Counted from the stretch's first letter, positions 8,261 to 59,800 are shown. The stretch: 64,000 bases of DNA from Macrostomum lignano (GCA_002269645.1 NIVC01000003.1:248001-312000); one strand, 5' to 3'. Numbers and translations are program-made. Notes: a model not told the origin generated them from the sequence alone.

Positions 8261-8263
<3 letters not shown>

Positions 8264-39600: not shown

Positions 39601-42600
39601 CCCATGGGGGCATTTGAATTCAAAATCCAAACATTGAAAGCATGAAAATTGTTTTTTTTGAATATTTGACCCTCTTCTAAATCTATTTTTCATTGTTTGA
39701 AATTTTATATATACTCCAGCAACATTGAAAAGTTGCCACTATGGCGCCAGTGAGCAATTTCTCTTGGACTATTCTGAAATAAAATATACAAGAAAACTGA
39801 TTGGGTAGCTTTAATCCATCCAACAAAACCCTCGCACACCACATCCCTCTCACTTCATTCCTCAACTCAAGCCTGCCACGACATTGCAAGTTGCGTCACT
39901 TAGAAAGATGGAGAAGCTTACCTACACTCTAAAAATTGGCAACCACAGACTTTTTGATGTTCCTGAGTATAAGCACACTATGACACCCAGCCCCTGATGG
40001 TGGGCTTTCAAGTAAAAAACTCAAACATTGAAAGCATTAACAACTTTGTTTTTCAAATATTTGACCCACTAACAATTGGTAGAAATTTATATACTGATTT
40101 GCCAAATGAACTTAAATCAATTGGGCCCATTAGCTACTGCCCACCATCTACAACTGCACCACCCAGTGTTGTATTCATAAAATAAGACAAACAAAATCAG
40201 ATCAGTTTAGGGGGTTGATAAATTTTAGGCCAGCTTTTTAACCCCCCATGCACCCACTCTTTTATCAAGGATAATAGAATTCAACCAACCAACCCCACAA
40301 ATTGCAAGCCTGCCACACAAAGGGTCATAAAAATCCTTTTGCTTAATTGTGGTGAGTGTATATCCTACACTGTACATTGGCAAAGGAGAGGCCTAAATGG
40401 TTGAACTGAGCAATTAAATTTAGAAATAGAGTGCCCATTGAAAACATTAGGAAATTAATTTTTCAAATATTTGACCCACTTCCCATTTGAATTTTTCATC
40501 AAAAAAGTTAAGCATAATCCCCAAAAAAATTAGATTTTTTAAAGCAAATTTGAAAAAAATTGGTCAGACAGTTCTTGAAAAAATCAATGACAAACAGACA
40601 GACAGACAGATAAACAGCATAAAATTAGTACATAGATTTATTTACTATTTGACCTTATCAATAAATAGTTCAACATTTTAAGAAAATGAGCCTAATTCAT
40701 AAAAATACAATTATAACTATCATATATGGCATTGCTAAGTTTTATTGCTAAAGGTAATATAAAGTTTGTAGAAATGGACAAACATGGAAAATGTTAGCTT
40801 TTTAAATTCTGCTATGTTGTGTATATACAAACTGTAACAAATTGTTTTTGTGCAAGTGTAATTAGTTAAGCTTATTTTATTTAATTTAGTTGGTTTAGTT
40901 AATAATAACATTATCACTAAAAAGTAATTTTATCTTCTAGCAGACAAACTAATAACAGATAAAAAGTGACTTAACCCCAATTTTAAATATAGTCAATTAA
41001 CTTAAGGCTAAGTTAGAATTTTGGTTTGGGTCTATTTATAAAAATAATGCTTTATAATTACCTAGATTAAGGCTAATTTAAGGAAAATTGGAATTAAATT
41101 CAAATTAAAAAAATTCAAATTGAAAGGCTAAATTAAATCAAGCTAAAATAAGCTATAATTAAGGGGATAATTAGGGACTCCACCTTACAAGCTAAAGTTC
41201 CTAATTATCGCTTTGCTTGTTCTCTAGGTCCAATTTTTGTAAAAAAAAATTGCCAAATCTAGTTTCCTAGTGTCATTGTGAGCAGAATGATATATTATTT
41301 TTATACATAAGTTACTTGTGCTCCACTTTATGAACTTAAGTTGAAAGGCCCTTTGTGCATTTTTGTTAAAATTTCATATCTTTACCTTGTAAAAACATGC
41401 AAATCAGTTTTTATTTAAATAGCTATCAATTTTTACAATTATATATACATGGAAAAGTTAGGACAACCATTGTGCCTATAATTGATAATGTAATTTTTTC
41501 AATTTTGGGAAACGTCGTAACAACAGTTACAGAAATACAGAAATCTTGCATGTTTTTTCCAAAACAGACTTTGTATTGCACGTCTTTGCTATTCCATCTT
41601 TTTAGCGAAATATAGAGGTCAAATCTAAGCAATTTGAAAGCTAAAAAAGTAATAAATAATCGTTTTAAAAACTTGCATGTATAATACTATTAAAAGTAAA
41701 GCATATGGTAAAAAAGTAACTTATTTTATTTGAAACCTAAAAGCTAATAGTGAGAAATTCATAATTAAATATGCATAGGATAGTTGTTTCAGTATGTATT
41801 GGTTTCCCGACAGACATTCAGACAGACATTCAGAAATCGTTCATTAAATGTTTAACAAAATTTTCTATTTATTACGCAAGATACTGTGAATTTATAGAAA
41901 CTTTTACGCATGTCTCTGCTTTAAAAAGACACCTCAGACACACACAAAGACGCTTCACAAGCTGAGATATTCCCTAGCAACTGTTGTTACGACGTTTCCC
42001 AATATACCGAATACTGTATATAGTAGTTTTTTGAGAAGCCGCTACATCGTCCCACTTTGGTCTTTCTGCATGAAATTTGCACAGCTGTTTTACGCATGTC
42101 TCTGCTTTAAAAAGACACCTCAGACACACACAAAGACGCTTCACAAGCTGAGATATTCCCTAGCAACTGTTGTTACGACGTTTCCCAATATACCGAATAC
42201 TGTATATAGTAGTTTTTTGAGAAGCCGCTACATCGTCCCACTTTGGTCTTTCTGCATGAAATTTGCACAGCTGTTTTACGCATGTCTCTGCTTTAAAAAG
42301 ACACCTCAGACACACACAAAGACGCTTCAAAAGCTGAGATATTCCCTAGCAACTGTTGTTACGACGTTTCCCAATATACCGAATACTGTATATAGTAGTT
42401 TTTTGAGAAGCCGCTACATCGTCCCACTTTGGTCTTTCTGCATGAAATTTGCACAGCTGTTTTACGCATGTCTCTGCTTTAAAAAGACACCTCAGACACA
42501 CACAAAGACGCTTCACAAGCTGAGATATTCCCTAGCAACTGTTGTTACGACGTTTCCCAATATACCGAATACTGTATATAGTAGTTTTTTGAGAAGCCGC

Positions 42601-45600
42601 TACATCGTCCCACTTTGGTCTTTCTGCATGAAATTTGCACAGCTGTTTTACGCATGTCTCTGCTTTAAAAAGACACCTCAGACACACACAAAGACGCTTC
42701 ACAAGCTGAGATATTCCCTAGCAACTGTTGTTACGACGTTTTGATGAGGACGCACTTTTTCCCAAATCCCGCGCTGGCACATGGGCTCTAAACTTACTAG
42801 CCTACTGACAGCAGGCTAAGGGCAATTTTATTCTCTTTTATCTTTTATTGGAGTCTTAGACTACTAGCAGTATTATTGAATGATGATGTTGAATAAAGAA
42901 AGGGACAATGCAGTTATCGCGGATCAAGTCTGACGTGATATTTATGGGTTGTTTTATGTTTCGTTGCACGAAATGTTTTGATGCTTATTTTCTGTAGTTT
43001 GATTCTCAGTTGCTGACGGGATTACCCCATCGTCTGAGTCGATAACATTTATTCTGTTCGATTTTACTAATGTGCACTGTTTAGCAAAGTGATCACTTTT
43101 CCGACGTTTGGCGCCTGTCTTTGGCGTTTGCACGTTCTGCAGTTGTTCGGTGGGCGATTTCGCTTACCCTTGTCGGAGTTGTCAATTGCGAATCGGTTTG
43201 AGACTCATTTGCTTCTGCGGTAGGCAGATCAATTTCTTAAAGTGATACCTGATACTCTCCAGTCATAATTTAGTCGCAAACTTTCTTTGCCATTTTGAGA
43301 GTCAGGTCTTACTTTATTCTGGTAGTCGTTCGACAAATTTGCTATCTCGATAAAAGATAAAAGAGAATAAAAATGCCCTTAGCCTGCTGTCAGTAGGCTA
43401 GTAAGTTTAGAGCCCATGTGCCAGTGCGGGATTTGGGAAAAAGTGCGTCCTCATCAAAATGTCGTAAAAACATTTGCTAGGGAATATCTCAGCTTGTGAA
43501 GCGTCTTTGTGTGTGTCTGAGGTGTCTTTTTAAAGCAGAGACATGCGTAAAACAGCTGTGCAAATTTCATGCAGAAAGACCAAAGTGGGACGATGTAGCG
43601 GCTTCTCAAAAAACTACTATATACAGTATTCGGTATATTGGGAAACGTCGTAACAACAGTTGCTAGGGAATATCTCAGCTTGTGAAGCGTCTTTGTGTGT
43701 GTCTGAGGTGTCTTTTTAAAGCAGAGACATGCGTAAAACAGCTGTGCAAATTTCATGCAGAAAGACCAAAGTGGGACGATGTAGCGGCTTCTCAAAAAAC
43801 TACTATATACAGTATTCGGTATATTGGGAAACGTCGTAACAACAGTTGCTAGGGAATATCTCAGCTTGTGAAGCGTCTTTGTGTGTGTCTGAGGTGTCTT
43901 TTTAAAGCAGAGACATGCGTAAAACAGCTGTGCAAATTTCATGCAGAAAGACCAAAGTGGGACGATGTAGCGGCTTCTCAAAAAACTACTATATACAGTA
44001 TTCGGTATATTGGGAAACGTCGTAACAACAGTTGCTAGGGAATATCTCAGCTTGTGAAGCGTCTTTGTGTGTGTCTGAGGTGTCTTTTTAAAGCAGAGAC
44101 ATGCGTAAAACAGCTGTGCAAATTTCATGCAGAAAGACCAAAGTGGGACGATGTAGCGGCTTCTCAAAAAACTACTATATACAGTATTCGGTATATTGGG
44201 AAACGTCGTAACAACAGTTGCTAGGGAATATCTCAGCTTGTGAAGCGTCTTTGTGTGTGTCTGAGGTGTCTTTTTAAAGCAGAGACATGCGTAAAACAGC
44301 TGTGCAAATTTCATGCAGAAAGACCAAAGTGGGACGATGTAGCGGCTTCTCAAAAAACTACTATATACAGTATTCGGTATATTGGGAAACGTCGTAACAA
44401 CAGTTGCTAGGGAATATCTCAGCTTGTGAAGCGTCTTTGTGTGTGTCTGAGGTGTCTTTTTAAAGCAGAGACATGCGTAAAACAGCTGTGCAAATTTCAT
44501 GCAGAAAGACCAAAGTGGGACGATGTAGCGGCTTCTCAAAAAACTACTATATACAGTATTCGGTATATTGGGAAACGTCGTAACAACAGTTGCTAGGGAA
44601 TATCTCAGCTTGTGAAGCGTCTTTGTGTGTGTCTGAGGTGTCTTTTTAAAGCAGAGACATGCGTAAAACAGCTGTGCAAATTTCATGCAGAAAGACCAAA
44701 GTGGGACGATGTAGCGGCTTCTCAAAAAACTACTATATACAGTATTCGGTATATTGGGAAACGTCGTAACAACAGTTGCTAGGGAATATCTCAGCTTGTG
44801 AAGCGTCTTTGTGTGTGTCTGAGGTGTCTTTTTAAAGCAGAGACATGCGTAAAACAGCTGTGCAAATTTCATGCAGAAAGACCAAAGTGGGACGATGTAG
44901 CGGCTTCTCAAAAAACTACTATATACAGTATTCGGTATATTGGGAAACGTCGTAACAACAGTTGCTAGGGAATATCTCAGCTTGTGAAGCGTCTTTGTGT
45001 GTGTCTGAGGTGTCTTTTTAAAGCAGAGACATGCGTAAAACAGCTGTGCAAATTTCATGCAGAAAGACCAAAGTGGGACGATGTAGCGGCTTCTCAAAAA
45101 ACTACTATATACAGTATTCGGTATATTGGGAAACGTCGTAACAACAGTTGCTAGGGAATATCTCAGCTTGTGAAGCGTCTTTGTGTGTGTCTGAGGTGTC
45201 TTTTTAAAGCAGAGACATGCGTAAAACAGCTGTGCAAATTTCATGCAGAAAGACCAAAGTGGGACGATGTAGCGGCTTCTCAAAAAACTACTATATACAG
45301 TATTCGGTATATTGGGAAACGTCGTAACAACAGTTGCTAGGGAATATCTCAGCTTGTGAAGCGTCTTTGTGTGTGTCTGAGGTGTCTTTTTAAAGCAGAG
45401 ACATGCGTAAAACAGCTGTGCAAATTTCATGCAGAAAGACCAAAGTGGGACGATGTAGCGGCTTCTCAAAAAACTACTATATACAGTATTCGGTATATTG
45501 GGAAACGTCGTAACAACAGTTGCTAGGGAATATCTCAGCTTGTGAAGCGTCTTTGTGTGTGTCTGAGGTGTCTTTTTAAAGCAGAGACATGCGTAAAACA

Positions 45601-47931
45601 GCTGTGCAAATTTCATGCAGAAAGACCAAAGTGGGACGATGTAGCGGCTTCTCAAAAAACTACTATATACAGTATTCGGTATATTGGGAAACGTCGTAAC
45701 AACAGTTGCTAGGGAATATCTCAGCTTGTGAAGCGTCTTTGTGTGTGTCTGAGGTGTCTTTTTAAAGCAGAGACATGCGTAAAACAGCTGTGCAAATTTC
45801 ATGCAGAAAGACCAAAGTGGGACGATGTAGCGGCTTCTCAAAAAACTACTATATACAGTATTCGGTATATTGGGAAACGTCGTAACAACAGTTGCTAGGG
45901 AATATCTCAGCTTGTGAAGCGTCTTTGTGTGTGTCTGAGGTGTCTTTTTAAAGCAGAGACATGCGTAAAACAGCTGTGCAAATTTCATGCAGAAAGACCA
46001 AAGTGGGACGATGTAGCGGCTTCTCAAAAAACTACTATATACAGTATTCGGTATATTGGGAAACGTCGTAACAACAGTTGCTAGGGAATATCTCAGCTTG
46101 TGAAGCGTCTTTGTGTGTGTCTGAGGTGTCTTTTTAAAGCAGAGACATGCGTAAAACAGCTGTGCAAATTTCATGCAGAAAGACCAAAGTGGGACGATGT
46201 AGCGGCTTCTCAAAAAACTACTATATACAGTATTCGGTATATTGGGAAACGTCGTAACAACAGTTGCTAGGGAATATCTCAGCTTGTGAAGCGTCTTTGT
46301 GTGTGTCTGAGGTGTCTTTTTAAAGCAGAGACATGCGTAAAACAGCTGTGCAAATTTCATGCAGAAAGACCAAAGTGGGACGATGTAGCGGCTTCTCAAA
46401 AAACTACTATATACAGTATTCGGTATATTGGGAAACGTCGTAACAACAGTTGCTAGGGAATATCTCAGCTTGTGAAGCGTCTTTGTGTGTGTCTGAGGTG
46501 TCTTTTTAAAGCAGAGACATGCGTAAAACAGCTGTGCAAATTTCATGCAGAAAGACCAAAGTGGGACGATGTAGCGGCTTCTCAAAAAACTACTATATAC
46601 AGTATTCGGTATATTGGGAAACGTCGTAACAACAGTTGCTAGGGAATATCTCAGCTTGTGAAGCGTCTTTGTGTGTGTCTGAGGTGTCTTTTTAAAGCAG
46701 AGACATGCGTAAAAGTTTCTATAAATTCACAGTATCTTGCGTAATAAATAGAAAATTTTGTTAAACATTTAATGAACGATTTCTGAATGTCTGTCTGAAT
46801 GTCTGTCGGGAAACCAATACATACTGAAACAACTATCCTATGCATATTTAATTATGAATTTCTCACTATTAGCTTTTAGGTTTCAAATAAAATAAGTTAC
46901 TTTTTTACCATATGCTTTACTTTTAATAGTATTATACATGCAAGTTTTTAAAACGATTATTTATTACTTTTTTAGCTTTCAAATTGCTTAGATTTGACCT
47001 CTATATTTCGCTAAAAAGATGGAATAGCAAAGACGTGCAATACAAAGTCTGTTTTGGAAAAAACATGCAAGATTTCTGTATTTTCTATGTTAACTTTAAT
47101 GGATTAACGCTTATTAACGATTATCAGTTAACTTTCAGTTAACTTAACGAAATTAGGAGTTAAAAAGTTAAGATTTTTTTGTTTTAACGCTAACACTTTT
47201 GCTATTAATGGAAGTTAAGATTTTCATTAATGGTGCCCAACACTGCTATGCTATATGCAATGCAATACTAATAAAAAAAATAAAAATATAGATTTATTGA
47301 ACAAATAACAATAAAAAAATAATTTTAAACTTTGTGCCTTAAATATTTTTCTCAATTGTTAGCAAATAAAAGTATTTAAAATACTTCTTTAATAATTGTC
47401 TTTTCTCAGTGCATCATCCATGTTGCAAATGTGCATACTTTTTAAGATTATTATTCTGTATGAAAAATAAATTCAAGAATAACTAACTCTAGTATACAAA
47501 GTTGAAAACATTTTTAGTCCTGGCATACAAAGGTGGTCCTATACTTTTTCATCCAACTGTACCTGGCATACACTAATACACAATCCAAACTATGGGTTAT
47601 TGGCCATATTAAAAAGTGTATTTCAACTTGTAATAATAGCATAGGATTAGTCTATAGGGCCCTATAACTGAGTTAAAATTAAAACATGTAGCAATAAATA
47701 TACCAATCAAAAAACCTATTAAAACACCTATTATATTATAGTTAATAAAACTATCAACTATATTATACTCCAAGAATCCAAAGCTAAATATTTAGCAAGA
47801 CTACAAGTTCCTACAAGTTAACTTGATTTAACAAACTTACCGGGCAGCTGTACATATATGGAAACAAATGCTATCAAATAAACGAAATTCAAGGCAGAAA
47901 GAAATCGATTAAAAAGCATAACTTGTGACAT
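33672..47931 (-). CDS. LMF2: Lipase maturation factor 2 (~649 aa)
   Basis: Exons (-) 47841-47931, 39223-39276, 38593-39038, 37335-37487, 36536-36665, 36335-36451, 36140-36245, 35075-35290, 33672-34308, all phase-consistent. [107 protein letters not shown]. Confidence 0.95.
34325..35048. repeat. 21-bp minisatellite in LMF2 intron 8
   Basis: CTGATGGGGACTGTGGGAGCT period. Confidence 0.95.
35335..36130. repeat. 30-31-bp minisatellite in LMF2 intron 7
   Basis: CCCCAGATAGAAACCCCACACCCCAACCCAT period. Confidence 0.95.
36849..37146. mobile_element. 298-bp non-autonomous DNA transposon (hAT-like MITE) carrying a 28S rDNA fragment
   Basis: TIR CATACATGAGCAAC / GTTGCGCATGTATG; 8-bp TSD AGTGGCAG (36841-36848, 37147-37154); subterminal ATGCGACT and TCGGCC repeats. 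Confidence 0.85.
36976..37039 (+). other. Degenerate 28S rDNA fragment (H69-H71 region, R2/Pokey/I-PpoI target)
   Basis: GGGTAAACGGCAGGAGTAACTATGACTGTCCTATTAAGCCAAAATGCCTCGTCAGCTACTTAGT versus the conserved 28S GGGTAAACGGCGGGAGTAACTATGACTCTCTTAAGGTAGCCAAATGCCTCGTCATCTAATTAGT. Confidence 0.88.
37645..38570. repeat. 26-bp minisatellite in LMF2 intron 3
   Basis: ACTGCTTCAGCATTGCCTGTGTCT(A/G)A, about 35 copies. Confidence 0.96.
39585..40637 (+). mobile_element. Helentron/DINE-1/Lep1-like non-autonomous element
   Basis: 5' ACTAGT...CCCCCATGGGGG; internally repeated CAAACATTGAAAGCAT...AATATTTGACCC modules; 3' (GACA)n followed by ...ACATAGAT, an architecture typical of HINE-like elements. Confidence 0.4.
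41902..42740 (+). repeat. 186-bp tandem repeat, about 4.5 copies (left arm)
   Basis: Period 186 (42031 to 42217). Confidence 0.97.
43458..46714 (-). repeat. 186-bp tandem repeat, about 17.5 essentially identical copies (right arm, inverted)
   Basis: Reverse complement of the left-arm unit; produces the 62-aa-repeat ORF. Confidence 0.97.
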
Positions 47932-48967
47932 TTTAGTGAAGTAATTAAAGCTGTTTTACTGTCTAGAGGTAAGTAGGGCCTAAAATTATTCAACAATACA
48001 AGGCTGCAAGACTGGGCAAGACAATAGGCTTATTTAAATAATGAAAAAATATAGACGTAGCTAATGTGCAAGACTGATGTTGTAAATTTTAGAGATTGAA
48101 ATTCAGACCAAAATGGATTAATCTAAAAAAACAGGGCCTAGACAGTATACATTAGATAAGATTCAAAACAGATAAATCGATTGAGTTTGATAAGAAAAAT
48201 TTTTGTTTCATAGAAAGCTTTTCGCTGAAATTTCGCCAATATGGGAGGCTCTTCATATTGCTTGTTCTGGTTCTAGAACCAGAACCAATTTGTAAAGTTT
48301 AACTTTTTGTCTCCATAACTAGAGGGATATTAGTGCTTTAATACTTTGATTATTGAATGGCAATAGCCAAGAAGAAAGTGAAAAATTGTGCAAAGTGATG
48401 CTGTTAGGGCACTCGAACATTCAACAAAGTTAAATAGTTATACTGCTTTTTTTCTTGGAAATCCGAACCGATTCTGGTTCTGGAATCGATTGCCGTGAAG
48501 AGGCTCTGGGTTTCATTTAAATAAATATAAAACTAAAACGGCCTCACGGCTACCTTGATTTATCCTAAGCAATTCATTCTCAATGCAAGCAATGTATGTC
48601 GCTTCAGTAGAGTTAAACAGTTGTTTTAGCAGTCCTTGTTCTGGAAATTATTTGATTGCATAGTTCTTGGAAATATCGAATCTGTGAACTTGTGAATATC
48701 ACAACATCATCAGTGATGAGTACAGATTTGGCGATTATGCTTTAAAGTTTTTTTCAGAAATTTTCATTCGGTTTTTATTGATTTATCGCTAGTAGTAAAC
48801 ATATTTTAAACGAAAATAGCAAGAAGAAAAATTATTACTTTAGTCAATTTTCATTTTAATACTATTTATTGAGAAGCTTGACTTAGTCCTAAACAGCCTA
48901 GACTCCTAGCTCCTAATCTTATCTTAAGTAAGTCTTACTGAAGTTACTGACTGCGACTGATTTCATA
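47932..48967. promoter_or_regulatory. Putative bidirectional promoter between LMF2 and the QPRT-like gene
   Basis: Divergent ATGs at 47931 (-) and 48968 (+); 22-bp perfect palindrome at 48264-48285; several TTCnn(n)GAA motifs. Confidence 0.6.
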
Positions 48968-51900
48968 ATGACGCATATTACTTCTCTTAGTGCAATAAAG
49001 AACATTGTAAAACTATGGATTGAGGAGGATAATATTATAAGCAACTCTGATGGAGTTTTTGTTCAATTTGATTCTAATGCAAGCAGACTAAATTTTCACA
49101 ACACTGGAGAAAATGGTCAGACTTGTGAAGATGATACTGAAGTTAATAGTTTTAATGAACACCCTGTATTATGTGCAGTCATTTTTGAAACAAAAGGTAT
49201 GTATATTGCATAGAACCTATAAAAAATTATTGGCATATGTCTATTTAGATTAGATGAAATAGAAACTATTGCCTAGCCTGGGCATTTGATTTAATGAATA
49301 AAAATTTTATACTAATAATGAATATTAGTGCTTAGCTGCTTAAGCCCTATAATTATTAGAAGGCTTTTTTAAGGTCTATAAAAATAAGTGATGTCTAATG
49401 ACAAAGTCTTTATAGGATCTTATTAACTACTGTCTAGGGACTCTAGTTTTTTTCCTTAGTTAATTGGTTTTTCCATTTGGAATAATTGTATTAATCCTAA
49501 AATGTTATTCTTTTTAGCTTGTATTCTTTAATGCCAACCCTTGATTTAACCTAATGGCATTCTTTTGGTTTACAATCACCTTCTATTTTGCCACTTTTGG
49601 TTTATGGTCACCTTATATTTTGATCAATTGCAGCATAAAAATGGCATGTTCAAAACTAAAAACTGAAAAAATATGCAAAGTTGAAAGTGCAGTTTGTTAG
49701 ATGATGCTTATATATTAGCTTTGGTATACAATCATTTAAATATATAATACAAATAGAAATGATTAGGGCCTATGAACTGAAGCTAGGTTAAAATTAATAT
49801 TGTAGGCCTATATAATGGATATACACTTATAGTAAAGGTATATTGCCAGCTTCAGTTTGTAATCATTTCAGTAGAGTGCATATATAGAAATGATTGTAAA
49901 CTGAATGTAAAGGGGTACAAAGATGAGAGGGGATTTCAATGCCCTTGATCTAGAATGAGCAGCAGTTTTCTGCACGTGACTATATTTTTGTATTTGATAT
50001 GCTTTTCTATAGCTAGCTGTGGTTCACAATCATTTCAATAGGCAATATATGTTTAGGTGATTGTAAACTGAAAGTGATATATATATAGGCTGCAAGCTCA
50101 AACTTGCAACTTGACAATTGAAATTATTTGACAGGCTTTACTATAGCCAGCTTTGGTTTGCAATCATTTTAGTAGGCAATATACATGTTGGTGATTGTAA
50201 ACTGAAGGTAAAATATAAGCTATAATAATCTTATCATCTTTTGAAATAAACAGTCAGTTTGCTAGCTTTTTATTTTGTTTCATGTCAATTACAACTGTTT
50301 TTAGTGCTGATTGTCATTGTTTGAGCTGATGATCACTATTTAAGGTAATTGTTAACCAAAAGAATGCCAACTATATTTTTATCTATTTTATATAAAAATA
50401 TAATTTCTATTTAAAAACTTGACTTTAAAAAATTGAGAACTTGAAGTAGGGCATTGATAATATTGTATATATGTTCTATAATTACTTGTTTTTGCATATT
50501 ATGTTTCTTAGAAAATCATATTTCAAAACCGCACTAAAAATAATTTTCTTTGTTTAACTTTTATGACATCCAAAAATATTCTTGCAAAACATTCTTTGTT
50601 ATTGTTATAAACAGTTTATAATTTAGGTATAAATAGACGCTCAGTGCAAGCCAAGAGAGACAACTTGCTGCCAACTATAAAGTAAGCAAGTTGCAAGATA
50701 ATACAATTTGTTCTAAGTATTAAAATTGCTAGTTGCAGTGTTTGAAAGACTTAGTCATTTCCTTTAGAGTATCAGAAATCTGCTAAAAGGTGAGAGTTGC
50801 CTCAGGGCAAGGAAATCGCCCTGAAATTTGCTTCCTTAGCTCTTGTATGCCAATAGACTAACATTGTATACAAAAAATGCCAAGACAACCATAAAATACA
50901 CGCTATAGTTTAGACTTGCAATTCTTTTATTTTTACTAAAAAGTTAAATAAAAATTTGTCTTACATTTTACTGAACTATAAGAAACTATTTTTTTACTTT
51001 TTTGTTTTACTTTTTAATTTCTTAGTAAGTTAAACATAATTTTCAATCTAGTTTTTTTAATTTTTGGGAACTTTTTTTATCAAAAATTAGATATTCCATC
51101 TATGCATGTGGAGATTATGCCAAATTTTAATTTTGTCATTTTTTGTACACCAACAATGTAAACTCATTGTAAGTTTAAAGCTCATTTAAAATAAAAAAAT
51201 CACAAAAAATTAGTTGTAGGCCTAATATTTACCATAAATATATGAATTCTGGCGGTTTCCCCCCAACTGTTTTGGCCATGGAGATTTTGCCCTAGAATAC
51301 TTTTCCCCTTGTGTCTGCTTTGCTTACAAGTTACAAACCAGTTCAGATAGGCATTTGGGTCACAATAGTGATTATTTTTTAATATATAAATAATATATTA
51401 TACTCAAATATTGGTATATTTAGCTTCTCAAAGGTAATTTTTATCAAATTTAGCTGAAAAATATACTTAATAATAATATAAACTCTGCAATACAAGTTAT
51501 TACAATTTGTAATACTGTAAATATAATGTTCAAAAATTTAGTATTGTTCATGTTGGTGTTTTTCTAAAAACACAAAAGTACATCCATATTCCTACAGTTG
51601 TTTATTTTTCTGTATGAGTGTAAGTAAAGCAATTCTCAATGATATAGAGATGTAGTCAATATATGTAAATGTAGATTGCACAGAATAAAATCTGTTAACT
51701 TTCTACAAGCTAACAAATAATGCGTATTGAGATTTCATGGACCTATACTAGTTCGTGACTGAATTGACTTGGTTTTAGTTGTAAGTTTCAAGTTTAAAAA
51801 TAATTTAACTAATAGAGCTATCAATTTTCAAAGCTGTATTTTTCGTTAAACTTAAAGAATCTCTTCTGACACTAATTTGAAGCTTAGCCTTTTGTGTACT

Positions 51901-53164
51901 AAGTCTCTTTTAGTGACTGCTTTGTGATACTTTATGAAGTATTATATAGAAATGTTACTGGCAAAATTTTGACCAAGCTAAAGCACTTAATCTTGCATGC
52001 TATAAAAAACTTCAATTTCAAGATATGATTACCTACGAGACCTCGTATCTTAATCTATCTACCAGCCTTCGCATTACTTGTTGATAGAAATCACTCGGAT
52101 GCTGAATATTTTGGTTAACCAACTCTGCTCGCTCAGGTGTACTCGCTGGCGTCCCATTTGCCGATGCGTTGCTCACCCGTCTGCGCTGCGAAGCCAGCTG
52201 GTCAGTGGCTGAAGGCGCCTACATCTCCTCCGTGCCGCAGCGGGTGGCCACCATCAGCGGCAGCCCAGCCTGCCTGGCCAGGGCCCGCCGGCTGCTGCCA
52301 GCTGTGCTGTCCAGGGCGTCCGGGTTAGCCACCTATGCCAACAGGTGAGACTTCGATGGTCTAGTCAAACTGATCTCCAGAATCCCCCAAACTGAACTCC
52401 AGAAACAGTGTGTTAGTGTTGCCCAATGCTGTCAATTAATGCCATAATCTGCAATATTTTTCCAGGCCAGCGTTGGCGCGTTGATTCTTGCAATCATGCC
52501 ACCATGTTTTTGTGTACTTATTATTGCATAATACTACTGGCAGTAGGCCAGCCAGCAACGAGAAATACGAGTTAGCTGCATGTTTGCCCTTCCCATATCT
52601 CTGCCAGGTTAGTTGAAAAGGCCGCCCTGTGCGACTGGCCCGGCTCCGTCTGCGCCGATTCCGACAGCCGCTGCACGCCCGGCCAGCGCCTGCTGGAGCG
52701 ACACGGCCTCCTTGTTGGCGGGGTCCGACCGTCTGCCTCTTCAACCGCGTCAACTGGCGGCGCTGTCGTGATTGTCGATACAACCGCAGCCGGCGGGGGC
52801 GGCGGCAGCGGCGTTGCGTCCGCACTGGCCGGCGCCAGGCGCTGCGCTGCTCCGTTTGGCCGGGTGGCCGCAGTCTGCGCCGATGAGGCCGAAGCTTTGC
52901 GCGCCTGCCGTCTCGGCGCCGATCTGGTGATGCTGGAGTGCACCAGCGCCGAGGTGAGGCATTGAGGCGCTTGGAGACTGTGTGCTTGTCAGAGATTCTG
53001 TACAGTGTCCTGTGTACGTGAGCCCGTGTACAGTGTCCTGTGTTTGTGTGTCAGCCCCTGTACAGTGTCCTGTGTTTGTGTGTCAGCCCCTGTACAGTGT
53101 CCTGTGTTTGTGTGTCAGCCCCTGAACAGTGTCCTGTGTGTGTGTGTGTATCAGCCCCTGTACA

Positions 53165-53231
<67 letters not shown>

Positions 53232-55440
53232 AGCCCCTGTACAGTGTCCTGTGTGTGTGTGTGTCAGCCCCTGTACAGTGTCCTGTGTGTGTCAGCCCCT
53301 GTACAGTGTCCTGTGTGTCAGCCCCTGTACAGTGTCCTGTGTGTCAGCCCCTGTACAGTGTCCTGTGTGAGTCAGAGCCCCCTGTACAGTGTCCTGTGTG
53401 AGTCAGAGCCCCCTGTACAGTGTCCTGTGTGAGTCAGAGCCCCCTGTACAGTGTCCTGTGTGAGTCAGAGCCCCCTGTACAGTGTCCTGTGTGAGTCAGA
53501 GCCCCCTGTACAGTGTCCTGTGTGAGTCAGAGCCCCTTGTACAGTGTCCTGTGTGAGTCAGAGCCCCCTGTACAGTGTCCTGTGTGAGTCAGAGCCCCCT
53601 GTACAGTGTCCTGTGTGAGTCAGAGCCCCCTGTACAGTGTCCTGTGTGAGTCAGAGCCCCCTGTACAGTGTCCTGTGTGAGTCAGAGCCCCCTGTACAGT
53701 GTCCTGTGTGAGTCAGAGCCCCCTGTACAGTGTCCTGTGTGAGTCAGAGCCCCCTGTACAGTGTCCTGTGTGAGTCAGAGCCCCCTGTACAGTGTCCTGT
53801 GTGAGTCAGAGCCCCCTGTACAGTGTCCTGTGTGAGTCAGAGCCCCCTGTACAGTGTCCTGTGTGAGTCAGAGCCCCCTATACTCCAACGTTCAGCGCCT
53901 CACCCATCATTCAGGTCTGCACCGCCGCCGCACGCGCTGTCAAGGCCGCCCACCCCGGCACGCTGGTCCAGGCCCGGCAGCTCGCCGCCTCTGACCTGGC
54001 CGCCTACTTTACTGCCGACATTGACGTCGTCTGTGTCGACGCCTCGCCGGCGCAGCTGCGGTCCGACTGGCCGGAGGTGGCGCTTCGACCCATCGCCGCT
54101 GGCACGGCCGCTTTCTCCGATGCCGCCGCCACAGCCGCCGTGGCCGCCGCCGCTGTAGCCGCGGCCGCGGCCATGCCGGCCAGAAAACGCAGGCGCTGCG
54201 CCTCGCAGGACTCGAACCCGCCGCGGCCGCCTACGGCACCCGTGCTCGGCTCCACTGCCGCCGCCACCGCCGCTGCCGCAGCCGCCGCGGTTGCCAAGCA
54301 GCCGCGCCTCGATCTGGCGACCTCGGCCACCGGCAGCGCAGGCGTCGGCGGCGGCTCCAGCAATCCGACCACCCCGACGCCGCAGATGGTCAACAGCTGT
54401 CGGGAGCTCGTCCCGGTTTTCAACACCGACCGCAGGAACTCGCAGCAGTCCGAACAGTCCGAGCAGCCGCAACAGCGGCGCCAGCGACGCGAGTCTCCGC
54501 CTCAACCGCCGCTGTCTGCCGCTGCTTCCGCCGCTGCGTCTGCTGCCGTCTCCGCCGCTGTAGCCGCCTCAGCCGCTAGGGCGGCCGCTGCCGTCGCTGG
54601 CGGCGCCGCACGACCAGCCGCTGTCCTATCCGTCCCCTACGGCTTCCTTCGCGTCCCGGTCTCGGGCGTCGCCGGCACGCCCATCCGGATGGTAGCGCCG
54701 CAGAGTCGGGCGGCGGCCGCAGCGGCTGCTGCTGCGGCTGCTGCTGCTGCTGCCTACCGGAACGCGCAGCATCGGCAGCCGATGACGCCAGCCGCCGCGA
54801 TGGCGATGCGATTCGGTTCTGTTGGCTACGGCACATCGGTTTCCGCTGCCCAGCTGCTGATGGGGCCCTGGCTGTGCAAGTGAGTCAGCTGTATTCGTGT
54901 TTGCCCTGTCTCAGATCCCCGTCCCATCTTCAGCTCCTGTCTCAGATCCCCATCCCATCTCCAGCTCCTGTCTCAGATCCCCGTCTTATCTCCAGCTCCT
55001 GTCTCAGATCCCCGTCCCATCTCCAGCTCCTGTCTCAGATCCCCGTCCCATCTTCAGCTCCTGTCTCAGATCCCCGTCCCATCTCCAGCTCCTGTCTCAG
55101 ATCCCCATCCCATCTCCAGCTCCTGTCTCAGATCCCCGTCCCATCTCCAGCTCCTGTCTCAGATCCCCATCCCATCTCCAGCTCCTGTCTCAGATCCCCA
55201 TCCCATCTCCAGCTCCTGTCTCAGATCCCCGTCCCAGCTGCAGCCTTTCTCAGATCCCCGTCCCAGCTGCAGCCTTTCTCAGATCCCGGTCCCATCTCTC
55301 CAGCTTGTCTCAGATCCCAAAAAGCTCACATTACAGCCTCTCCATCATCTTCACCCCGTCGCCCCCACAGAGTGTGCCGCGGTGCCAACATGTACACTAC
55401 AGTGTGCCGGCACTGCAGCCGCAACCGGGGTCTGTACTAG
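48968..55440 (+). CDS. Quinolinate phosphoribosyltransferase (QPRT/NadC)-like protein, probably catalytically dead, with Ala-rich region, NLS and C-terminal RanBP2-type zinc finger (~605 aa)
   Basis: Exons 48968-49196, 52137-52344, 52608-52953, 53915-54879, 55371-55440, phase-consistent. KLWIEED, GVLAGVPFADALL, WSVAEG, SRASG, TPGQRLLERHGLLVGG, GADLVML, VKAAHP, DIDVVC follow the QPRT order; AATAAA at 55489. Confidence 0.82.
49555..50369 (+). repeat. Array of four homologous hairpins enclosed by 28-bp inverted repeats (MITE-like or miRNA-cluster-like)
   Basis: Outer IR 49555-49582 / 50342-50369; hairpins at ~49717-49784, 49851-49905, 50018-50072 and 50151-50207. Confidence 0.7.
52995..53878. 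repeat. Compound intron repeat: CAGCCCCTGTACAGTGTCCTGT variants, (GT)n and a 31-bp minisatellite
   Basis: GTGAGTCAGAGCCCCCTGTACAGTGTCCTGT, about 16 copies from ~53367. Confidence 0.95.
54905..55320. repeat. 31-bp minisatellite in the last QPRT-like intron
   Basis: CTCAGATCCCCGTCCCATCTCCAGCTCCTGT period. Confidence 0.93.
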
Positions 55441-55814
55441 CAATGGACCCCGCGTGACCAGCAAGGGCTGGTGTAAGTTTCTTCAAGCAATAAAATCAGA
55501 TATGAAGGTCACCGCTGTAAGATGTTTTGAGACTGGAGATTTTAAAAACTGCATTTTTTATAAGTCGCTAGGCTCTGTTTGACTATAAATTTTCCTTTCT
55601 CACATTGCAAACCCTACTGCAAGTAGTATTATTATTAATACTGCAAGCAAATAGTTTTCTGTTCTAGTTATACCGAAGTTAATTGTTCTTAACTGATTAT
55701 TTAATTTAATCTCCACTTCTCTGCAAATGACATTGTATTGTATACCTGCTATGCTAAATGACTCGATTTTAAAAGTTTTGAGTGGGCCATGTTCATGGGA
55801 ACTATATGCTTCTT

Positions 55815-56040
55815 GCTCCCTGATCCTTCAGCGGCTGCTGCTACCCCTCCCTGATCCTTCAGCGGCTGCTGCTACCCCCTCCCTGATCCTTCAGCGGCTG
55901 CTGCTACCCCCTCCCTGATCCTTCAGCGGCTGCTGCTACCCCCTCCCTGATACTTCAGCGGCTGCTGCTAACCCCTCCATGATCCTTCAGCGGCTGCTGC
56001 TACCCCCTCCCTGATCCTTCAGCGGCTGCTGCTACCCCTA
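55815..56040. repeat. 32-bp minisatellite, about 7 copies
   Basis: CTCCCTGATCCTTCAGCGGCTGCTGCTACCCC. Confidence 0.92.
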
Positions 56041-56876: not shown

Positions 56877-59800
56877 TCAGTCAACGTTGAGCTTGGTGAA
56901 GGTGCCCTGGATACCAGTGGTCGCGTCCGCTGCGCTGTCCTCGGTGCGCAAGTAGTCCTTGGTCGTTGGCAGCCGCTTGGATTCGTCAACCTCCATCTCC
57001 TGCCGCTGAAGGCGCCACTCCCTGTGCATCCGCTCGCTGCCGAAGTTGTTTCTTGTCCATTCCATCAGCTCCTGCAGGGTGCCGTTGCTGCCGCCGAGCT
57101 CCTTGGGTAGCAGACGGTCGGCGTCCTGCTCCCCGATGACTTTCCTGAGCCGGGCGTAGTCCTTGCCGACTTTGTGCAGCTTCTTCTTGAACTTCTCCTT
57201 GAGAAACGGCGCGTTTTTTATCAGGGTGAAGATCACGTCAAAGAACGCCGGCTCGTTCACAAAAATGACAGCTTTAGTGCGATTGGGACTGGCGTCCTGC
57301 CAGTTGCGCATCAGAGAGAAGAAGTTCTTGCGGTTCTCGAAGAAGCTCAGTTGATTTCGATTGGACCGGCTCATGTCAATCAGGACCTTGATGCCGTTGA
57401 TCTGGCTGTACTGGTCCAGCTGCACCGCGTCCACTGACATGTACATGCAGCGGATCAGCTGATCGAACGTCATCTTCTGCTGGTCCCAGTAGCCCATGTT
57501 GGACACGTAGACGCCCTCGCCTTCGCTTGTGTGTCCGAGAAACACGTGGAAAGGATGGCTGAGGTACTCCTGCCGAAGGAAGTGGCGTAGGACTTCTGAG
57601 CCTCTGTTTGCCAGAAAGTTGGCTAAATAGTAATCAGCCTCACCTTAACCTCTGGACTGTCCACAGAAGGGTAGTCAAACCATGACGGCGTGCCCTTGGG
57701 CGACTTGCGGATGGTCAGGTAGTTGTCCAGCAGCATCTGAGCGCGGCTCTGGTCGAACTTGGCCACGCGAAGGAAGCGCAGCAGGAATCGGTCGTCTGCG
57801 GAGCGAAGTGATTCGATGCGGCTTAATCCTCATGTGTGTTGGGCAAGACACAAATTCGCGTAAATTCGAGCAAAGTAAAAAAATCCCATTTTCGGAGCCC
57901 AATAATGACGAAATATTTCGCAAGTTTTCGCACTTCTGGTGGCAATAGTGCTGTTTACTATCTGTAGAATTGACTTTAGACTTTGGTCTTCCGTCTGTTT
58001 TCCTGTCTAGGGCAGGCAATGCTGTTCACATTGCAGTGTCTGGGGTTACCTTTGACCCCGGCGCTTATCTGCTGCTGCAGCCAAGAAAGTGACTATTTGA
58101 GTCTGGGTTGAGGCATATCTCTGAGTCTGTTTACTTTAGTGCTCAAGGCATAATTGAATTTCTCCAGATTATGTAAGTCTCTAAATTTAGTTCTTATATC
58201 TGTTTTCAACCCAGTGTAAAAAGCTTGTTGCTATACGCGACGCCATCCTAAACTGCTGTTTATTTTTCAGCAAATTTCAAATTCGCTCCAATCGCCATGG
58301 TAGCCGATTTTGTTCAACGGGTCACCGCCTATCCGGCCGTGGCCTCCGCCTGGCAGCGGGCCGCCAGCTGCTACGACTGGGCCCTGTCCGCCAGCCCCAG
58401 CGTCCGCTCCGCCGCCGGCTTCACCGAGGGCGGCCTGCGCCGTGCCGCTGCCACCGCGGCGCCGCTGCTGGCGCGCATCGAGCCCGCTGTGGCGCGCCTG
58501 GACCGCCTGGCCTGCGCCCAGCTGCTGGACCGGCTGGAGGCCCGCTGTCCGGCCGTGAAGGAGGCCACTGCCCAGGAGCTGGTCGCCTCGGCGCGCGACG
58601 CTGTCCAGCCGACGCTGATGGCACCGGTGAATAGCGCCGTTGCCAAGGTGACGGGGTGGGGCAGTGGCCGTGCTGTGATGCGGAAAGTTGGCACGTCGCA
58701 GAAGAGAAACCTGCGCTCAATAAGGCCATCGAACTGCACCGAATAGGGCCACCAGGGTTGCTTAGGATGGGGCGCAGAATAGCTCTGTGTGACTCTCGTG
58801 CTGAAGTCCCGGGTTCGATAACGGAAATTGTCCTTGGGGGCTTGCCGTGCTATTCACACCATTGAGGTCCAGCCTCTAAACTGCAGAGTTTGTACATGCC
58901 CGGCGATGAGAACATTTCTGGACTGCAGTACACCCTGTGTGAGCGGGTCGGGCATGACTGCTTGTCTGCTACGTTAGGGTTAGGGGATTCAACAAGAACA
59001 CTGATTCGGGCTAATGCCGCATGAATGCCTGAACTCGTCTTCGCCATATCCGCAAATCCGCAGGCGCAGTCGGCCAAAGCCTACGGCCTGGCCAAGTGCA
59101 GGCGGCTGTCGGAGGACAGCGGCGAGCTGGTGGTGGCCTGGGTTGACCGCTGCGTGGACCACTACCTGCCCGAGGACGGCGAGGCCGGGAAGGAGCGGCG
59201 TCAACAGCAGCAGCAGCAGTCGGAGGCTACTGAAGGCATTCGCCAGAAACTCCGTCGCCGACTGTTGAGCCGCGTCGCCGACTTTGCTGTCCGACTCTCC
59301 GCCGACGATGGCGATGACGAGAATCAGCAACGCGCGGCTGAAGCGGACGGAGTCGCCGCCGTCCAGCTGGCCGCCTTCGCTGCAGCCGCCGCCGCCAAGC
59401 GCCGGGCTCGAGCCGCCTCGTTGGCCGGTGCCGAGTTCGCGGCTGCCCGACTGCCCGACCTGGAGACTCTGCCTGGCGCTGGCCGCGTGGTGGCCTGGCT
59501 GGTGAGCTGGGATGAGCCTGCGACTTGAATTCCCCTCTGGTGTCTTAGATTCCCCTCTGGTGTCTTGGATTCCCATCTGATATCTTGGATTCCCCTCTGG
59601 CGTCTTGGATTCCCCTCTGGTATCTTGGATTCCCCTCTGGTGTCTTAGATTCCCCTCTGGTATCTTGGATTCCCCTCTGGTGTCTTGGATTCCCATCTGA
59701 TATCTTGGATTCCCCTCTGGTGTCTTGGATTCCCCTCTGGTATCTTGGATTCCCCTCTGGTGTCTTGGATTCCCCTCTGATATCTTGGATTCCCCTCTGG

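What the first reader, a model, noticed from the sequence alone, without database searches (positions are those of the whole stretch)
48968..55440. QPRT pseudo-enzyme fused to an Ala-rich IDR, NLS and RanBP2-type zinc finger
Seen: five phase-consistent exons encode the whole QPRT fold in order. Aligning by eye to human QPRT (recalled sequence), most substrate/PRPP residues are replaced: GTRKTTPG becomes DSDSRCTPG (R138 lost), SHR becomes PSA (H160/R161 lost), VKDNH becomes IVDTT (K171 lost), VEVEC becomes VAAVC (E201 lost), LDN becomes LEC (D222 changed) and SGG becomes ARQ. The frame is nonetheless open with strong codon bias. Exon 4 continues in frame into poly-Ala/Gln/Pro tracts and PARKRRRC (classical NLS-like). 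A final spliced exon completes WLCKVCRGANMYTTVCRHC, a W-x-C-x2-C-x3-N-x5-C-x2-C finger close to the RanBP2 consensus (Nx6). Inference: a dead NAD-biosynthesis enzyme repurposed as a nuclear scaffold or metabolite (quinolinate/PRPP/NaMN) sensor with an RNA- or ubiquitin-binding finger. I do not know this architecture from the literature.
Basis: partly seen in the sequence, partly recalled or inferred. Interest (0 to 1): 0.75.

Follow-up and report, generated by a model that had tools for sequence, protein, structure and literature searches.

The report
Dead QPRT enzyme with zinc-finger tail
This is a real five-exon animal gene for a catalytically dead copy of the NAD-synthesis enzyme QPRT joined to a long floppy tail, a nuclear-import-like motif and a terminal zinc finger; the same unstudied design is found across parasitic flatworms, where databases still label it an active enzyme.

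Summary
Five GT..AG exons (48968-49196, 52137-52344, 52608-52953, 53915-54879, 55371-55440) give a 605-aa ORF. Its first ~310 residues are a QPRT fold: human QPRT E=2e-30, and AF2/Foldseek TM 0.85. Ten of 12 residues that are ~98% invariant in canonical QPRTs are replaced.

The architecture is not unique. Trematode and cestode proteins have the same dead QPRT domain, a 170-290-aa low-complexity tail with a K-K/R-x-K/R motif, and a C-terminal CxxC-x9/10-CxxC finger. They come from Calicophoron, Dicrocoelium, Schistosoma japonicum (a cDNA), Mesocestoides, Hymenolepis and Taenia.

- All three QPRT-domain introns sit at the same positions as in the cestode genes.
- The window protein is sister to that clade (bootstrap 100).
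- The domain is under purifying selection in Hymenolepis (dN/dS 0.15).

So this is a conserved pseudoenzyme gene, not a decaying pseudogene.

No Pfam zf-RanBP match exists for the finger in any member; it scores as a generic zinc ribbon. The old pocket residues are less conserved within the family than the rest of the domain, which argues against a quinolinate/PRPP sensor.

The function is untested. My best guess is a nuclear scaffold.

The parts
48968..49196 (+). Exon 1: start codon and N-terminal helix of the QPRT-like domain (aa 1-76), with a ~26-aa lineage-specific insertion. AT-rich (GC 32%, GC3 0.20).
   Evidence: An ATG-initiated ORF ends at a GT donor in phase. SLSAIKNIVKLWIEED aligns with the orthologue N-termini such as SRHSAKNLVCSWLSEE. 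The intron position ETKG|VLAG is shared with cestode genes.
49197..52136 (+). Intron 1 (2940 nt, 29% GC). The sharp AT-to-GC composition switch lies at its 3' end.
52137..52344 (+). Exon 2: QRPTase_N domain (aa 77-145).
   Evidence: Pfam QRPTase_N covers aa 66-138. AF2 pLDDT exceeds 90. The intron position YANR|LVEK is shared with cestodes.
52608..52953 (+). Exon 3: first part of the QRPTase_C barrel (aa 146-261). It carries most of the degenerate active-site positions: R138S, K139R, H160S, R161T, K171V, E201V and D222E.
53915..54879 (+). Exon 4: end of the QPRT barrel (aa 262-~310), then an Ala-rich low-complexity tail (aa ~311-579) and the first Zn knuckle, W-L-C-K.
   Evidence: The frame has 0 stops against 2-6 in the other five frames. 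AF2 pLDDT is below 50 for most of the tail. Tail length is comparable to the orthologues.
54176..54199 (+). PARKRRRC, a basic K-K/R-x-K/R motif (classical monopartite NLS pattern).
   Evidence: Sequence is. A K-K/R-x-K/R motif occurs at a similar place in the tails of P0033, P0044, P0164, P0188 and P0062.
54293..54313 (+). AKQPRLD. This is the positional counterpart of the orthologues' conserved KKxRLD/KRxK motif in the MAFFT alignment.
54880..55370 (+). Intron 4 (491 nt, GTGAGT...CAG), filled by a 31-bp minisatellite. It splits the zinc finger. If retained, the frame stops at once (AAG TGA).
55371..55440 (+). Exon 5: the rest of the finger (VCRGANMYTTVCRHC), 7 further residues and the stop codon.
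   Evidence: all four Cys are invariant in the 7-sequence family alignment.
55489..55494 (+). AATAAA polyadenylation signal, 49 nt after the stop codon.
53234..53883 (.). 31-bp minisatellite (21 copies) filling intron 3.

Best explanation
The locus is an intact, spliced gene for a non-catalytic descendant of quinolinate phosphoribosyltransferase. It is the orthologue, in a metazoan genome that is probably a non-neodermatan flatworm, of an uncharacterised protein family present in trematodes and cestodes.

Shown here:
- The QPRT two-domain fold is kept.
- The quinolinate/PRPP/Mg residues are gone.
- The domain is followed in the same exon by a ~270-aa low-complexity region with a K-K/R-x-K/R basic motif.
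- The protein ends in a CxxC-x9-CxxC zinc-ribbon-like finger.
- This design, and the three domain intron positions, are conserved across the family.
- The dead domain evolves under purifying selection in cestodes.

Inferred, not shown: the protein no longer makes nicotinate mononucleotide. Instead the QPRT fold, which in the enzymes forms dimers and hexamers, would serve as a structural or oligomerisation module. That module would present several disordered arms, each tipped with a small zinc ribbon, inside the nucleus, giving a multivalent adaptor for nucleic acid or protein partners. The retention probably relates to the loss of the kynurenine/de novo NAD pathway in most flatworms, which removed selection on catalysis while another role kept the fold.
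For: - Gene model with four GT..AG introns and a 605-aa ORF; polyA signal.
- QPRT homology: PDB phmmer E=2e-30, Pfam, AF2 pLDDT above 90 in the domain, and Foldseek top hits human QPRT with target TM 0.84-0.86 at E=3.6e-26.
- Catalytic columns read RRKHRKDEDSGG in essentially all canonical homologues but R S R S T V D V E R - Q here.
- The nadC equivalog HMM scores 80 bits against a cut-off of 198.
- Orthologues share the architecture: P0033 Calicophoron, P0044 Dicrocoelium, P0054 S. japonicum cDNA SJCHGC09401, P0164 Mesocestoides and P0188 H. microstoma. In Taenia solium the tail and finger lie downstream of the annotated QPRT-like gene.
- Alignments show conserved N-terminus, domain, basic motif, the MGGP segment and 4 invariant Cys.
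- Three shared intron positions.
- In the NJ tree the window protein is sister to the neodermatan clade with bootstrap 100.
- dN/dS is 0.15 for H. diminuta against H. weldensis.
- Transcript evidence from relatives: the S. japonicum cDNA carries both domain and finger, and a 1.7-kb S. mansoni 'Qprt' clone was recovered in a yeast two-hybrid screen with the Src kinase SmTK3 (PMC2734992).
- The whole kynurenine pathway is reported lost in flatworms except basal Rhabditophora (bioRxiv 10.64898/2026.06.05.730449).
Against: - There is no transcript or protein evidence for this locus itself.
- No close orthologue exists for a dN/dS test on this lineage. The best database identity is 43%, over a partial ~115-residue stretch (P0073); no near-full-length match exceeds about 37%.
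- The window protein is more degenerate than the parasite proteins. It has also lost R161 and E201, and keeps only 27 of 69 canonical-conserved columns against their 31-34. A recent loss of function in this lineage cannot be formally excluded.
- An open frame in 73% GC DNA is only modestly improbable, at 2-4%.
- The finger has a one-residue-shorter loop than the orthologues and is modelled at low confidence.
- Nuclear localisation, oligomerisation, zinc binding and any partner are all untested. The only functional datum in the family is a single two-hybrid clone.
- The tree grouping could be inflated by long-branch attraction.
Confidence: 0.75

Rival explanations
1. It is a decaying QPRT pseudogene. 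The long open frame and the 'finger' would be by-products of very GC-rich, stop-poor sequence.
For: All catalytic residues are lost. Several 90-200-aa ORFs exist in other frames of the same GC-rich region. Simulated sequence of the same composition stays open 2-4% of the time. No expression data exist, and no database protein is near-identical.
Against: Four canonical introns are in phase and the polyA signal is present. The coding frame alone has zero stops. The same domain + tail + basic motif + 4-Cys C-terminus recurs in trematodes and cestodes. Three intron positions are shared. Thirty domain columns are invariant across the family alignment. AF2 models the domain with high confidence. The family is under purifying selection.
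Confidence: 0.07
2. It is a ligand sensor. The dead active site would still bind quinolinate, PRPP, NaMN or a new small molecule and pass that signal to a nuclear output through the tail and finger.
For: The barrel and pocket architecture are retained. The window protein keeps R102, D172 and the TPG motif, and the parasite proteins keep R161 and E201.
Against: The residues kept differ between lineages. Identity at the 12 pocket columns is 0.28 within the family and 0.08 between the window protein and the parasites, both lower than the rest of the domain at 0.46 and 0.30. The loops that carried H160/R161 and K171 are Ser/Thr/Gly-rich and modelled at pLDDT below 60. The SGG phosphate-binding turn is gone.
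Confidence: 0.1
3. It is still an active QPRT, or another phosphoribosyltransferase, using a non-canonical residue set.
For: The fold is intact, and databases name the orthologues 'quinolinate phosphoribosyltransferase [decarboxylating]'.
Against: Ten of 12 positions that are 98% invariant from bacteria to vertebrates are replaced, and replaced differently in each lineage. The nadC equivalog score is 80 against a cut-off of 198. The upstream pathway is reported lost in most flatworms. The database names are automatic.
Confidence: 0.03
4. It is a gene-model artefact. A QPRT-like gene and a separate small zinc-finger or low-complexity gene would lie next to each other, as the Taenia solium annotation has it.
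For: In T. solium the domain and the tail+finger are annotated as two genes. H. diminuta and T. solium models end without the finger.
Against: In the window the end of the QPRT barrel and the whole tail lie in one uninterrupted exon, with no stop and no intervening splice needed. The S. japonicum cDNA-derived protein contains both parts. Four independent annotations (Calicophoron, Dicrocoelium, Mesocestoides, H. microstoma) join them.
Confidence: 0.05

Closest known systems
Quinolinate phosphoribosyltransferase (QPRT / NadC / BNA6; EC 2.4.2.19), e.g. human QPRT (PDB 5AYX, 2JBM, 4KWV)
   Same: It has the same two-domain type II phosphoribosyltransferase fold. Identity to human QPRT is 37% over 226 aligned residues, and Foldseek target TM is 0.85. 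Structural motifs are retained: GVLAG, LSRASG-AT and TPG.
   Different: R138, K139, H160, R161, K171, E201, D222 and S248-G250 are all replaced. It falls well below the nadC equivalog threshold. It carries a ~295-aa C-terminal extension that canonical QPRTs lack.
Uncharacterised flatworm 'QPRT' proteins: S. japonicum SJCHGC09401 (AAW26440.1), Calicophoron daubneyi CAL8092355.1, Dicrocoelium dendriticum CAH8449879.1, Mesocestoides corti VDD74806.1, and the Hymenolepis microstoma 483-aa protein
   Same: Shared features are the dead QPRT domain, a 170-290-aa low-complexity tail with a K-K/R-x-K/R motif, a C-terminal CxxC-x9/10-CxxC finger, three shared intron positions, and a sister-group position in the tree.
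   Different: Identity is only about 21-25% over the full length. The window protein's tail is Ala-rich (32% Ala) rather than Q/N/S/P/G-rich. There is an extra 26-aa insert in exon 1. The finger loop is one residue shorter, is preceded by a Trp, and is split by an intron that Taenia lacks. The window protein has additionally lost R161 and E201, which the parasite proteins keep.
RanBP2/NZF-type zinc fingers (Pfam PF00641; Npl4, TAB2/3, ZRANB2, FUS/EWS/TAF15)
   Same: It is a small 4-Cys, two-knuckle finger with an Asn four residues after the second Cys. The orthologues have exactly the C-x2-C-x3-N-x6-C-x2-C spacing. Like Npl4 and TAB2/3, it sits at the extreme C-terminus. Like the FET proteins, it follows a low-complexity region.
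   Different: No member has a PF00641 hit. The NZF ubiquitin-binding T-F dipeptide is absent and so are the ZRANB2 RNA-contact residues (read from the sequence against my own knowledge of those motifs). The Trp is present only in the window protein. PDB profile hits to NZF are not significant, at E 0.07-0.3.
Ribosomal protein eL40 and generic zinc ribbons (Pfam Zn_Ribbon_1, DZR, DUF7577)
   Same: This is the best sequence-level resemblance for the family finger: CRxCGxxNxxxxxxCRxCR against eL40 CRNCGARNPPDAEKCRRCRS. The orthologue fingers give weak Pfam hits to these families.
   Different: Scores are below the gathering thresholds for all full-length proteins; only the isolated 30-aa P0033 finger peptide edges past the DUF7577 cut-off (29 vs 28 bits). 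The resemblance is to a generic fold class and carries no functional implication.
Degenerate QPRT-like proteins of powdery mildews (Blumeria Bgt-2091, CCU82247.1)
   Same: They are an independent example of QPRT homologues with substituted catalytic columns in an obligate parasite.
   Different: They have no long tail or finger. They form a separate branch in the tree. I did not examine them further.

Membership tests
QPRT / NadC enzyme family (EC 2.4.2.19) | QRPTase_N + QRPTase_C two-domain fold | tested here: met
   Pfam gives 26.8 bits against 27 and 25.1 bits against 23.1, at threshold. PDB phmmer gives E=2e-30. The AF2 model superposes on human QPRT with target TM 0.84-0.86.
QPRT / NadC enzyme family (EC 2.4.2.19) | Quinolinate/PRPP/Mg-binding residues (human R102, R138, K139, H160, R161, K171, D172, E201, D222, S248-G249-G250) | tested here: not met
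   Only R102 and D172 are kept. The others are S, R, S, T, V, V, E, R, gap and Q. The same columns are 98% identical in 21 canonical homologues.
QPRT / NadC enzyme family (EC 2.4.2.19) | Score above the NCBIfam nadC equivalog cut-off (TIGR00078, 198.4 bits) | tested here: not met
   80.1 bits.
QPRT / NadC enzyme family (EC 2.4.2.19) | Catalytic activity (quinolinate + PRPP -> NaMN + CO2 + PPi) | not testable with these tools
   This needs an enzyme assay or complementation.
Flatworm dead-QPRT / disordered tail / zinc-ribbon proteins (uncharacterised; defined here from database members) | QPRT-like domain with degenerate catalytic columns | tested here: met
Flatworm dead-QPRT / disordered tail / zinc-ribbon proteins (uncharacterised; defined here from database members) | 170-290-aa low-complexity C-terminal extension containing a K-K/R-x-K/R motif | tested here: met
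   The tail here is about 270 aa, with RKRR at aa 351. The orthologues carry KKTR, KKLR, KRLK, KRQR and KRAR. P0054 lacks the motif.
Flatworm dead-QPRT / disordered tail / zinc-ribbon proteins (uncharacterised; defined here from database members) | CxxC-x9/10-CxxC within the last ~30 residues | tested here: met
   Four invariant Cys in the alignment of 7 members. The window protein has x9 and the others x10.
Flatworm dead-QPRT / disordered tail / zinc-ribbon proteins (uncharacterised; defined here from database members) | Shared ancestry: intron positions and tree position | tested here: met
   Introns at G|VLAG, YA(N/K)R|L and (E/K)|(V/D) coincide with those of H. diminuta and T. solium. The NJ tree gives bootstrap 100 for window + neodermatan clade, with a long-branch caveat.
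RanBP2-type zinc finger (Pfam PF00641 zf-RanBP) | Match to the family profile | tested here: not met
   No hit at E<=10 for the full protein, the isolated tail, the isolated finger, or five orthologues.
RanBP2-type zinc finger (Pfam PF00641 zf-RanBP) | Pattern W-x-C-x(2,4)-C-x3-N-x6-C-x2-C | tested here: inconclusive
   The window protein has W-x-C-x2-C-x3-N-x5-C-x2-C, one residue short. Most orthologues have N-x6-C but no Trp, and H. microstoma has Tyr in place of Asn. The pattern itself is quoted from my own knowledge of the family.
RanBP2-type zinc finger (Pfam PF00641 zf-RanBP) | Zinc coordination and zinc-ribbon fold | not testable with these tools
   AF2 pLDDT is below 50 for aa 553-605.
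Classical monopartite NLS | K-K/R-x-K/R basic cluster in an exposed region | tested here: met
   R-K-R-R-R at aa 351-355 lies in a region of pLDDT below 50. This is a pattern match only.
Classical monopartite NLS | Importin-dependent nuclear import | not testable with these tools
   This needs localisation experiments.

The most novel reading that the evidence does not exclude
When flatworms dispensed with the kynurenine/de novo NAD pathway (or before, by duplication), the QPRT fold was kept for more than 500 million years (the age is my own estimate) as the oligomeric core of a nuclear protein. Its disordered arms and terminal zinc ribbons would form a multivalent nucleic-acid- or protein-binding assembly. 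That would make it a phylum-wide metabolic-enzyme-to-nuclear-scaffold conversion, mislabelled as an enzyme in every flatworm genome annotation, and possibly linked to Src-kinase signalling in schistosome gonads.
Probability: 0.3. Interest if true: 0.7.

Novelty: new variant of a known kind. Interest (0 to 1): 0.55.

Why it matters
- It corrects an annotation error that runs through flatworm genomes, including those of major human and livestock parasites. These 'QPRT' entries cannot be read as evidence of de novo NAD synthesis, which matters for metabolic reconstructions and drug-target lists.
- It gives a clean, datable case of a core metabolic enzyme kept as a pseudoenzyme after its pathway was lost, with a conserved added module (tail, basic motif, zinc ribbon) that points to a new cellular role.
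- The window gene is the most divergent member found and lies outside the parasite clade. That shows the conversion predates the Neodermata, and it offers a possibly free-living species in which to study the function.

Tried and rejected
- **First homology search, domain only:** it found no flatworm relative, because the word index shares too few 5-mers with this Ala-rich sequence. The family surfaced only in the exhaustive phmmer search.
- **Profile search with the full-length family alignment:** low-complexity words swamped it, giving 2 hits and wasting one capped search. Repeating with the domain-only alignment worked, but returned cestodes only.
- **Identifying the source organism:** this failed. 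Rfam found nothing. Exact look-ups of window ORFs found nothing. Spliced models are not accepted for look-up. There is no near-identical protein in either protein collection. Neighbouring genes show only that it is a metazoan.
- **Finger exon in H. diminuta:** I looked for it in locus L001 and did not find it, either contiguous or as a terminal half. The Taenia locus did contain it.
- **RanBP2 classification:** rejected as a membership claim after three Pfam scans.
- **Metabolite-sensor reading:** rejected as the leading explanation because the pocket is not conserved within the family.
- **Literature searches:** searches for QPRT with pseudoenzyme, flatworm, Schistosoma or Macrostomum found only the two-hybrid mention and the pathway-loss statement.

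Full report
**1. What is in the sequence**

Reading 48500-56000 and assembling the proposed exons gives a clean model on the + strand.
- Exons are 48968-49196, 52137-52344, 52608-52953, 53915-54879 and 55371-55440.
- All four introns start GT and end AG. The last donor is CAA|GTGAGT, and its acceptor follows a pyrimidine tract.
- The phases are consistent, and the CDS is 1818 nt (605 aa plus stop).
- An AATAAA lies at 55489, 49 nt after the stop.

Exon 1 is compositionally unlike the rest: GC 32% and GC3 0.20, against GC 62-73% and GC3 about 0.78. It still belongs to the gene, for three reasons.
- Its N-terminus, SLSAIKNIVKLWIEED, aligns with the N-termini of the relatives found later.
- Its 3' end runs into the conserved G-VLAG motif.
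- The intron sits where the cestode genes have one.

**2. Is it QPRT, and is it dead?**

Homology evidence:
- Pfam finds QRPTase_N (aa 66-138) and QRPTase_C (aa 141-304), both at about threshold.
- phmmer against PDB sequences gives human and pig QPRT at E about 2e-30, covering aa 68-302, with 37% identity.
- An AlphaFold2 model built on a 34-sequence alignment has pLDDT above 90 through most of the domain.
- Foldseek places human QPRT first, at E=3.6e-26 and target-normalised TM 0.84-0.86.

I mapped the alignment onto native human numbering. I then checked the same columns in a MAFFT alignment of more than 100 homologues and in a curated set. The twelve substrate/PRPP/Mg columns read RRKHRKDEDSGG in essentially every canonical QPRT, from bacteria to vertebrates, at 98% pairwise identity. 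Here they read R S R S T V D V E R - Q. Only R102 and D172 survive.

The NCBIfam nadC equivalog model scores 80 bits against a cut-off of 198. The exact register in the lengthened H160/R161 loop is uncertain, but that loop has no His.

**3. The tail and the finger**

The end of the barrel and the tail share one exon, so no splice is needed to join them.
- The coding frame of exon 4 has no stop in 321 codons. The other five frames have 2-6.
- Sequence simulated with the same dinucleotide statistics stays open only 2-4% of the time. This is suggestive rather than conclusive in 73% GC DNA.
- The tail is 32% Ala. AF2 models it as disordered or as low-confidence Ala helices.
- PARKRRRC is at aa 349-356.
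- W-L-C-K at the end of exon 4 joins V-C-R-G-A-N-M-Y-T-T-V-C-R-H-C in exon 5. This makes CxxC-x9-CxxC, 7 residues from the C-terminus.

Pfam gives no zf-RanBP match for the full protein, the tail or the isolated finger, even at E<=10.

**4. Relatives change the picture**

The word-indexed search with the domain found only canonical QPRTs at 33% identity or less. The exhaustive phmmer search of 1.84 billion representatives returned 314 hits. Among the 150 best that are listed, every one matches only the QPRT region and none exceeds 43% identity.

Among the hits, a handful have degenerate catalytic columns and unusual lengths. Their sequences and sources show a family:
- Calicophoron daubneyi, 537 aa
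- Dicrocoelium dendriticum, 512 aa
- Schistosoma japonicum cDNA product SJCHGC09401, 429 aa and N-terminally truncated
- Mesocestoides corti, 577 aa
- Hymenolepis microstoma, 483 aa
- Shorter or mis-terminated models from H. diminuta, H. weldensis, Rodentolepis nana and Taenia solium

Each full-length member has the same parts:
- a dead QPRT domain;
- a 170-290-aa tail rich in Q/N/S/P/G;
- a K-K/R-x-K/R motif a few dozen residues into the tail;
- an MGGP-like segment;
- a C-terminal finger, for example SCRTCGSANPPGMMFCRNCRSQLR.

The four Cys are invariant in a seven-sequence alignment that includes the window protein.

In T. solium the tail and finger lie about 2-4 kb downstream of the annotated QPRT-like gene and are annotated as a separate gene. 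Because the S. japonicum entry derives from a cDNA, it is transcript-level evidence that domain and finger are one message.

UniProt names these proteins 'quinolinate phosphoribosyltransferase [decarboxylating]' automatically.

**5. Orthology and selection**

- tblastn of cestode proteins onto their genomic loci shows introns at G|(I/V)LAG, after YA(K/S)(K/R)(F), and at (K)|(D/E)L. These are the same three places as introns 1-3 of the window gene.
- An NJ tree with 100 bootstraps puts the window protein as sister to the trematode+cestode clade with support 100. The other long branches (Blumeria) stay outside. Long-branch attraction cannot be ruled out, but the shared tail, finger and introns are independent rare characters.
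- For the closely related pair H. diminuta / H. weldensis, 286 codons of the domain give 27 synonymous and 14 non-synonymous differences. dN/dS is 0.15. The dead domain is therefore under purifying selection in cestodes.
- Within the family, the 12 former pocket columns are 28% identical, against 46% for the rest of the domain. Between the window protein and the parasites the figures are 8% and 30%. In canonical QPRTs they are 98% and 48%.

The pocket has been released from constraint rather than retuned to a shared new ligand. This is the main argument against the sensor hypothesis.

**6. The finger's class**

Pfam scans of five orthologues and two isolated fingers give weak hits to DUF7577, Zn_Ribbon_1 and DZR, and never to zf-RanBP. 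A profile of the seven fingers, searched against PDB sequences, finds eL40 zinc ribbons first (E=0.008). Npl4 NZF (0.07) and TAB3 NZF (0.26) follow. None of these is decisive.

The orthologues do have the C-x2-C-x3-N-x6-C-x2-C spacing typical of RanBP2/NZF fingers, which I quote from my own knowledge of that family. The window protein is one residue shorter, but it alone has the upstream Trp.

The fair statement is 'a small C4 zinc ribbon that resembles RanBP2/NZF and eL40 knuckles'. Membership in PF00641 was tested and not met.

**7. Context**

The window is metazoan. Neighbouring ORFs hit LMF1, perilipin, CRAL-TRIO, fibrinogen-C and an SLC1-type transporter.

The species could not be identified, and its proteome is evidently not in the protein collections. 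From the tree, a non-neodermatan flatworm or close relative is the most economical guess. That is an inference.

A 2026 preprint reports loss of the entire kynurenine pathway in flatworms except basal Rhabditophora. This fits relaxed selection on QPRT catalysis.

The only functional mention I found is a 2009 yeast two-hybrid screen. In it, a 1.7-kb S. mansoni 'Qprt' clone (3e-18 to mouse Qprt) bound the unique region of the Src kinase SmTK3. I found no paper describing the family as a pseudoenzyme.

**8. Mechanism**

Shown:
- a conserved, selected, non-catalytic QPRT fold;
- a conserved disordered tail with a basic motif;
- a conserved terminal 4-Cys motif.

Inferred:
- nuclear import through the basic motif;
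- use of the QPRT fold as a dimer/hexamer core, as in the enzymes (established structural knowledge of QPRT, not tested here);
- display of several tail-and-zinc-ribbon arms, giving a multivalent adaptor.

I put about 0.9 on 'real gene, dead enzyme, member of this flatworm family' and about 0.3-0.35 on the nuclear-scaffold mechanism. The combined statement is scored 0.75, because its core is the former.

**9. Verdict**

The architecture is not unique to this locus, but it is unstudied and mis-annotated across a phylum. I rate it a new variant of a known kind (QPRT family), with interest 0.55.

Noticed in passing
window 48968-52344 (boundary near 52100): There is an abrupt composition switch inside the gene. 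Exon 1 and intron 1 are about 29-32% GC (GC3 0.20), and everything from exon 2 onward is 62-73% GC (GC3 about 0.78). The whole window alternates between ~29% and ~65% GC blocks on a scale of a few kb to about 10 kb.
   Followed up: partly
window 53234-53883 and 54905-55318, and about 25 other arrays across the window: Introns 3 and 4 are almost entirely filled by 31-bp minisatellites (21 and 13.5 copies). Similar arrays with 18-38-bp units, typically 10-68 copies, occur throughout the window (33 TRF rows). They create many spurious long ORFs.
   Followed up: no
window 41902-42741 (+) and 43457-46714 (inverted): A 186-bp satellite at 99% identity sits in two arrays of opposite orientation (4.5 and 17.5 copies), just upstream of the gene. 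It produces an artefactual 1043-aa ORF.
   Followed up: no
window 27591-30680 (-): An uninterrupted 1029-aa ORF carries reverse transcriptase and RNase H domains. It is a possibly intact non-LTR-type retrotransposon, lying in the most GC-rich block of the window.
   Followed up: partly
L002 (Taenia solium MIEF01005501.1) 8001-9904 and 11867-13745; L001 (H. diminuta): Public annotations break the orthologue. In T. solium the dead-QPRT domain and the tail+finger are called as two genes. The H. diminuta, R. nana and T. solium protein models end in read-through intron sequence without the finger.
   Followed up: partly
proteins P0117 and P0119 (Blumeria graminis / B. hordei): Powdery-mildew 'QPRT' proteins also have substituted catalytic columns (RREHRKPENTGN and THSKQDQTEQHE). 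This looks like an independent case of QPRT degeneration in an obligate parasite.
   Followed up: no
proteins P0018 (475 aa) and P0023 (527 aa): These are catalytically intact QPRT homologues with large extra regions. P0018 has an N-terminal Cys/His-rich segment, and P0023 has a ~240-aa C-terminal extension. Their source organisms are unknown.
   Followed up: no
window 1300-5200 (-), 14688-15185 (-), 33672-39060 (-), 56877-57545 (-), 58297-58746 (+): Neighbouring exons hit an SLC1-type Na+:dicarboxylate/amino-acid symporter, fibrinogen-C, lipase maturation factor (LMF1 and LMF1_C), CRAL-TRIO and perilipin. There is no synteny with the cestode loci, where the orthologue follows an srGAP-like gene and Rpb6.
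   Followed up: partly
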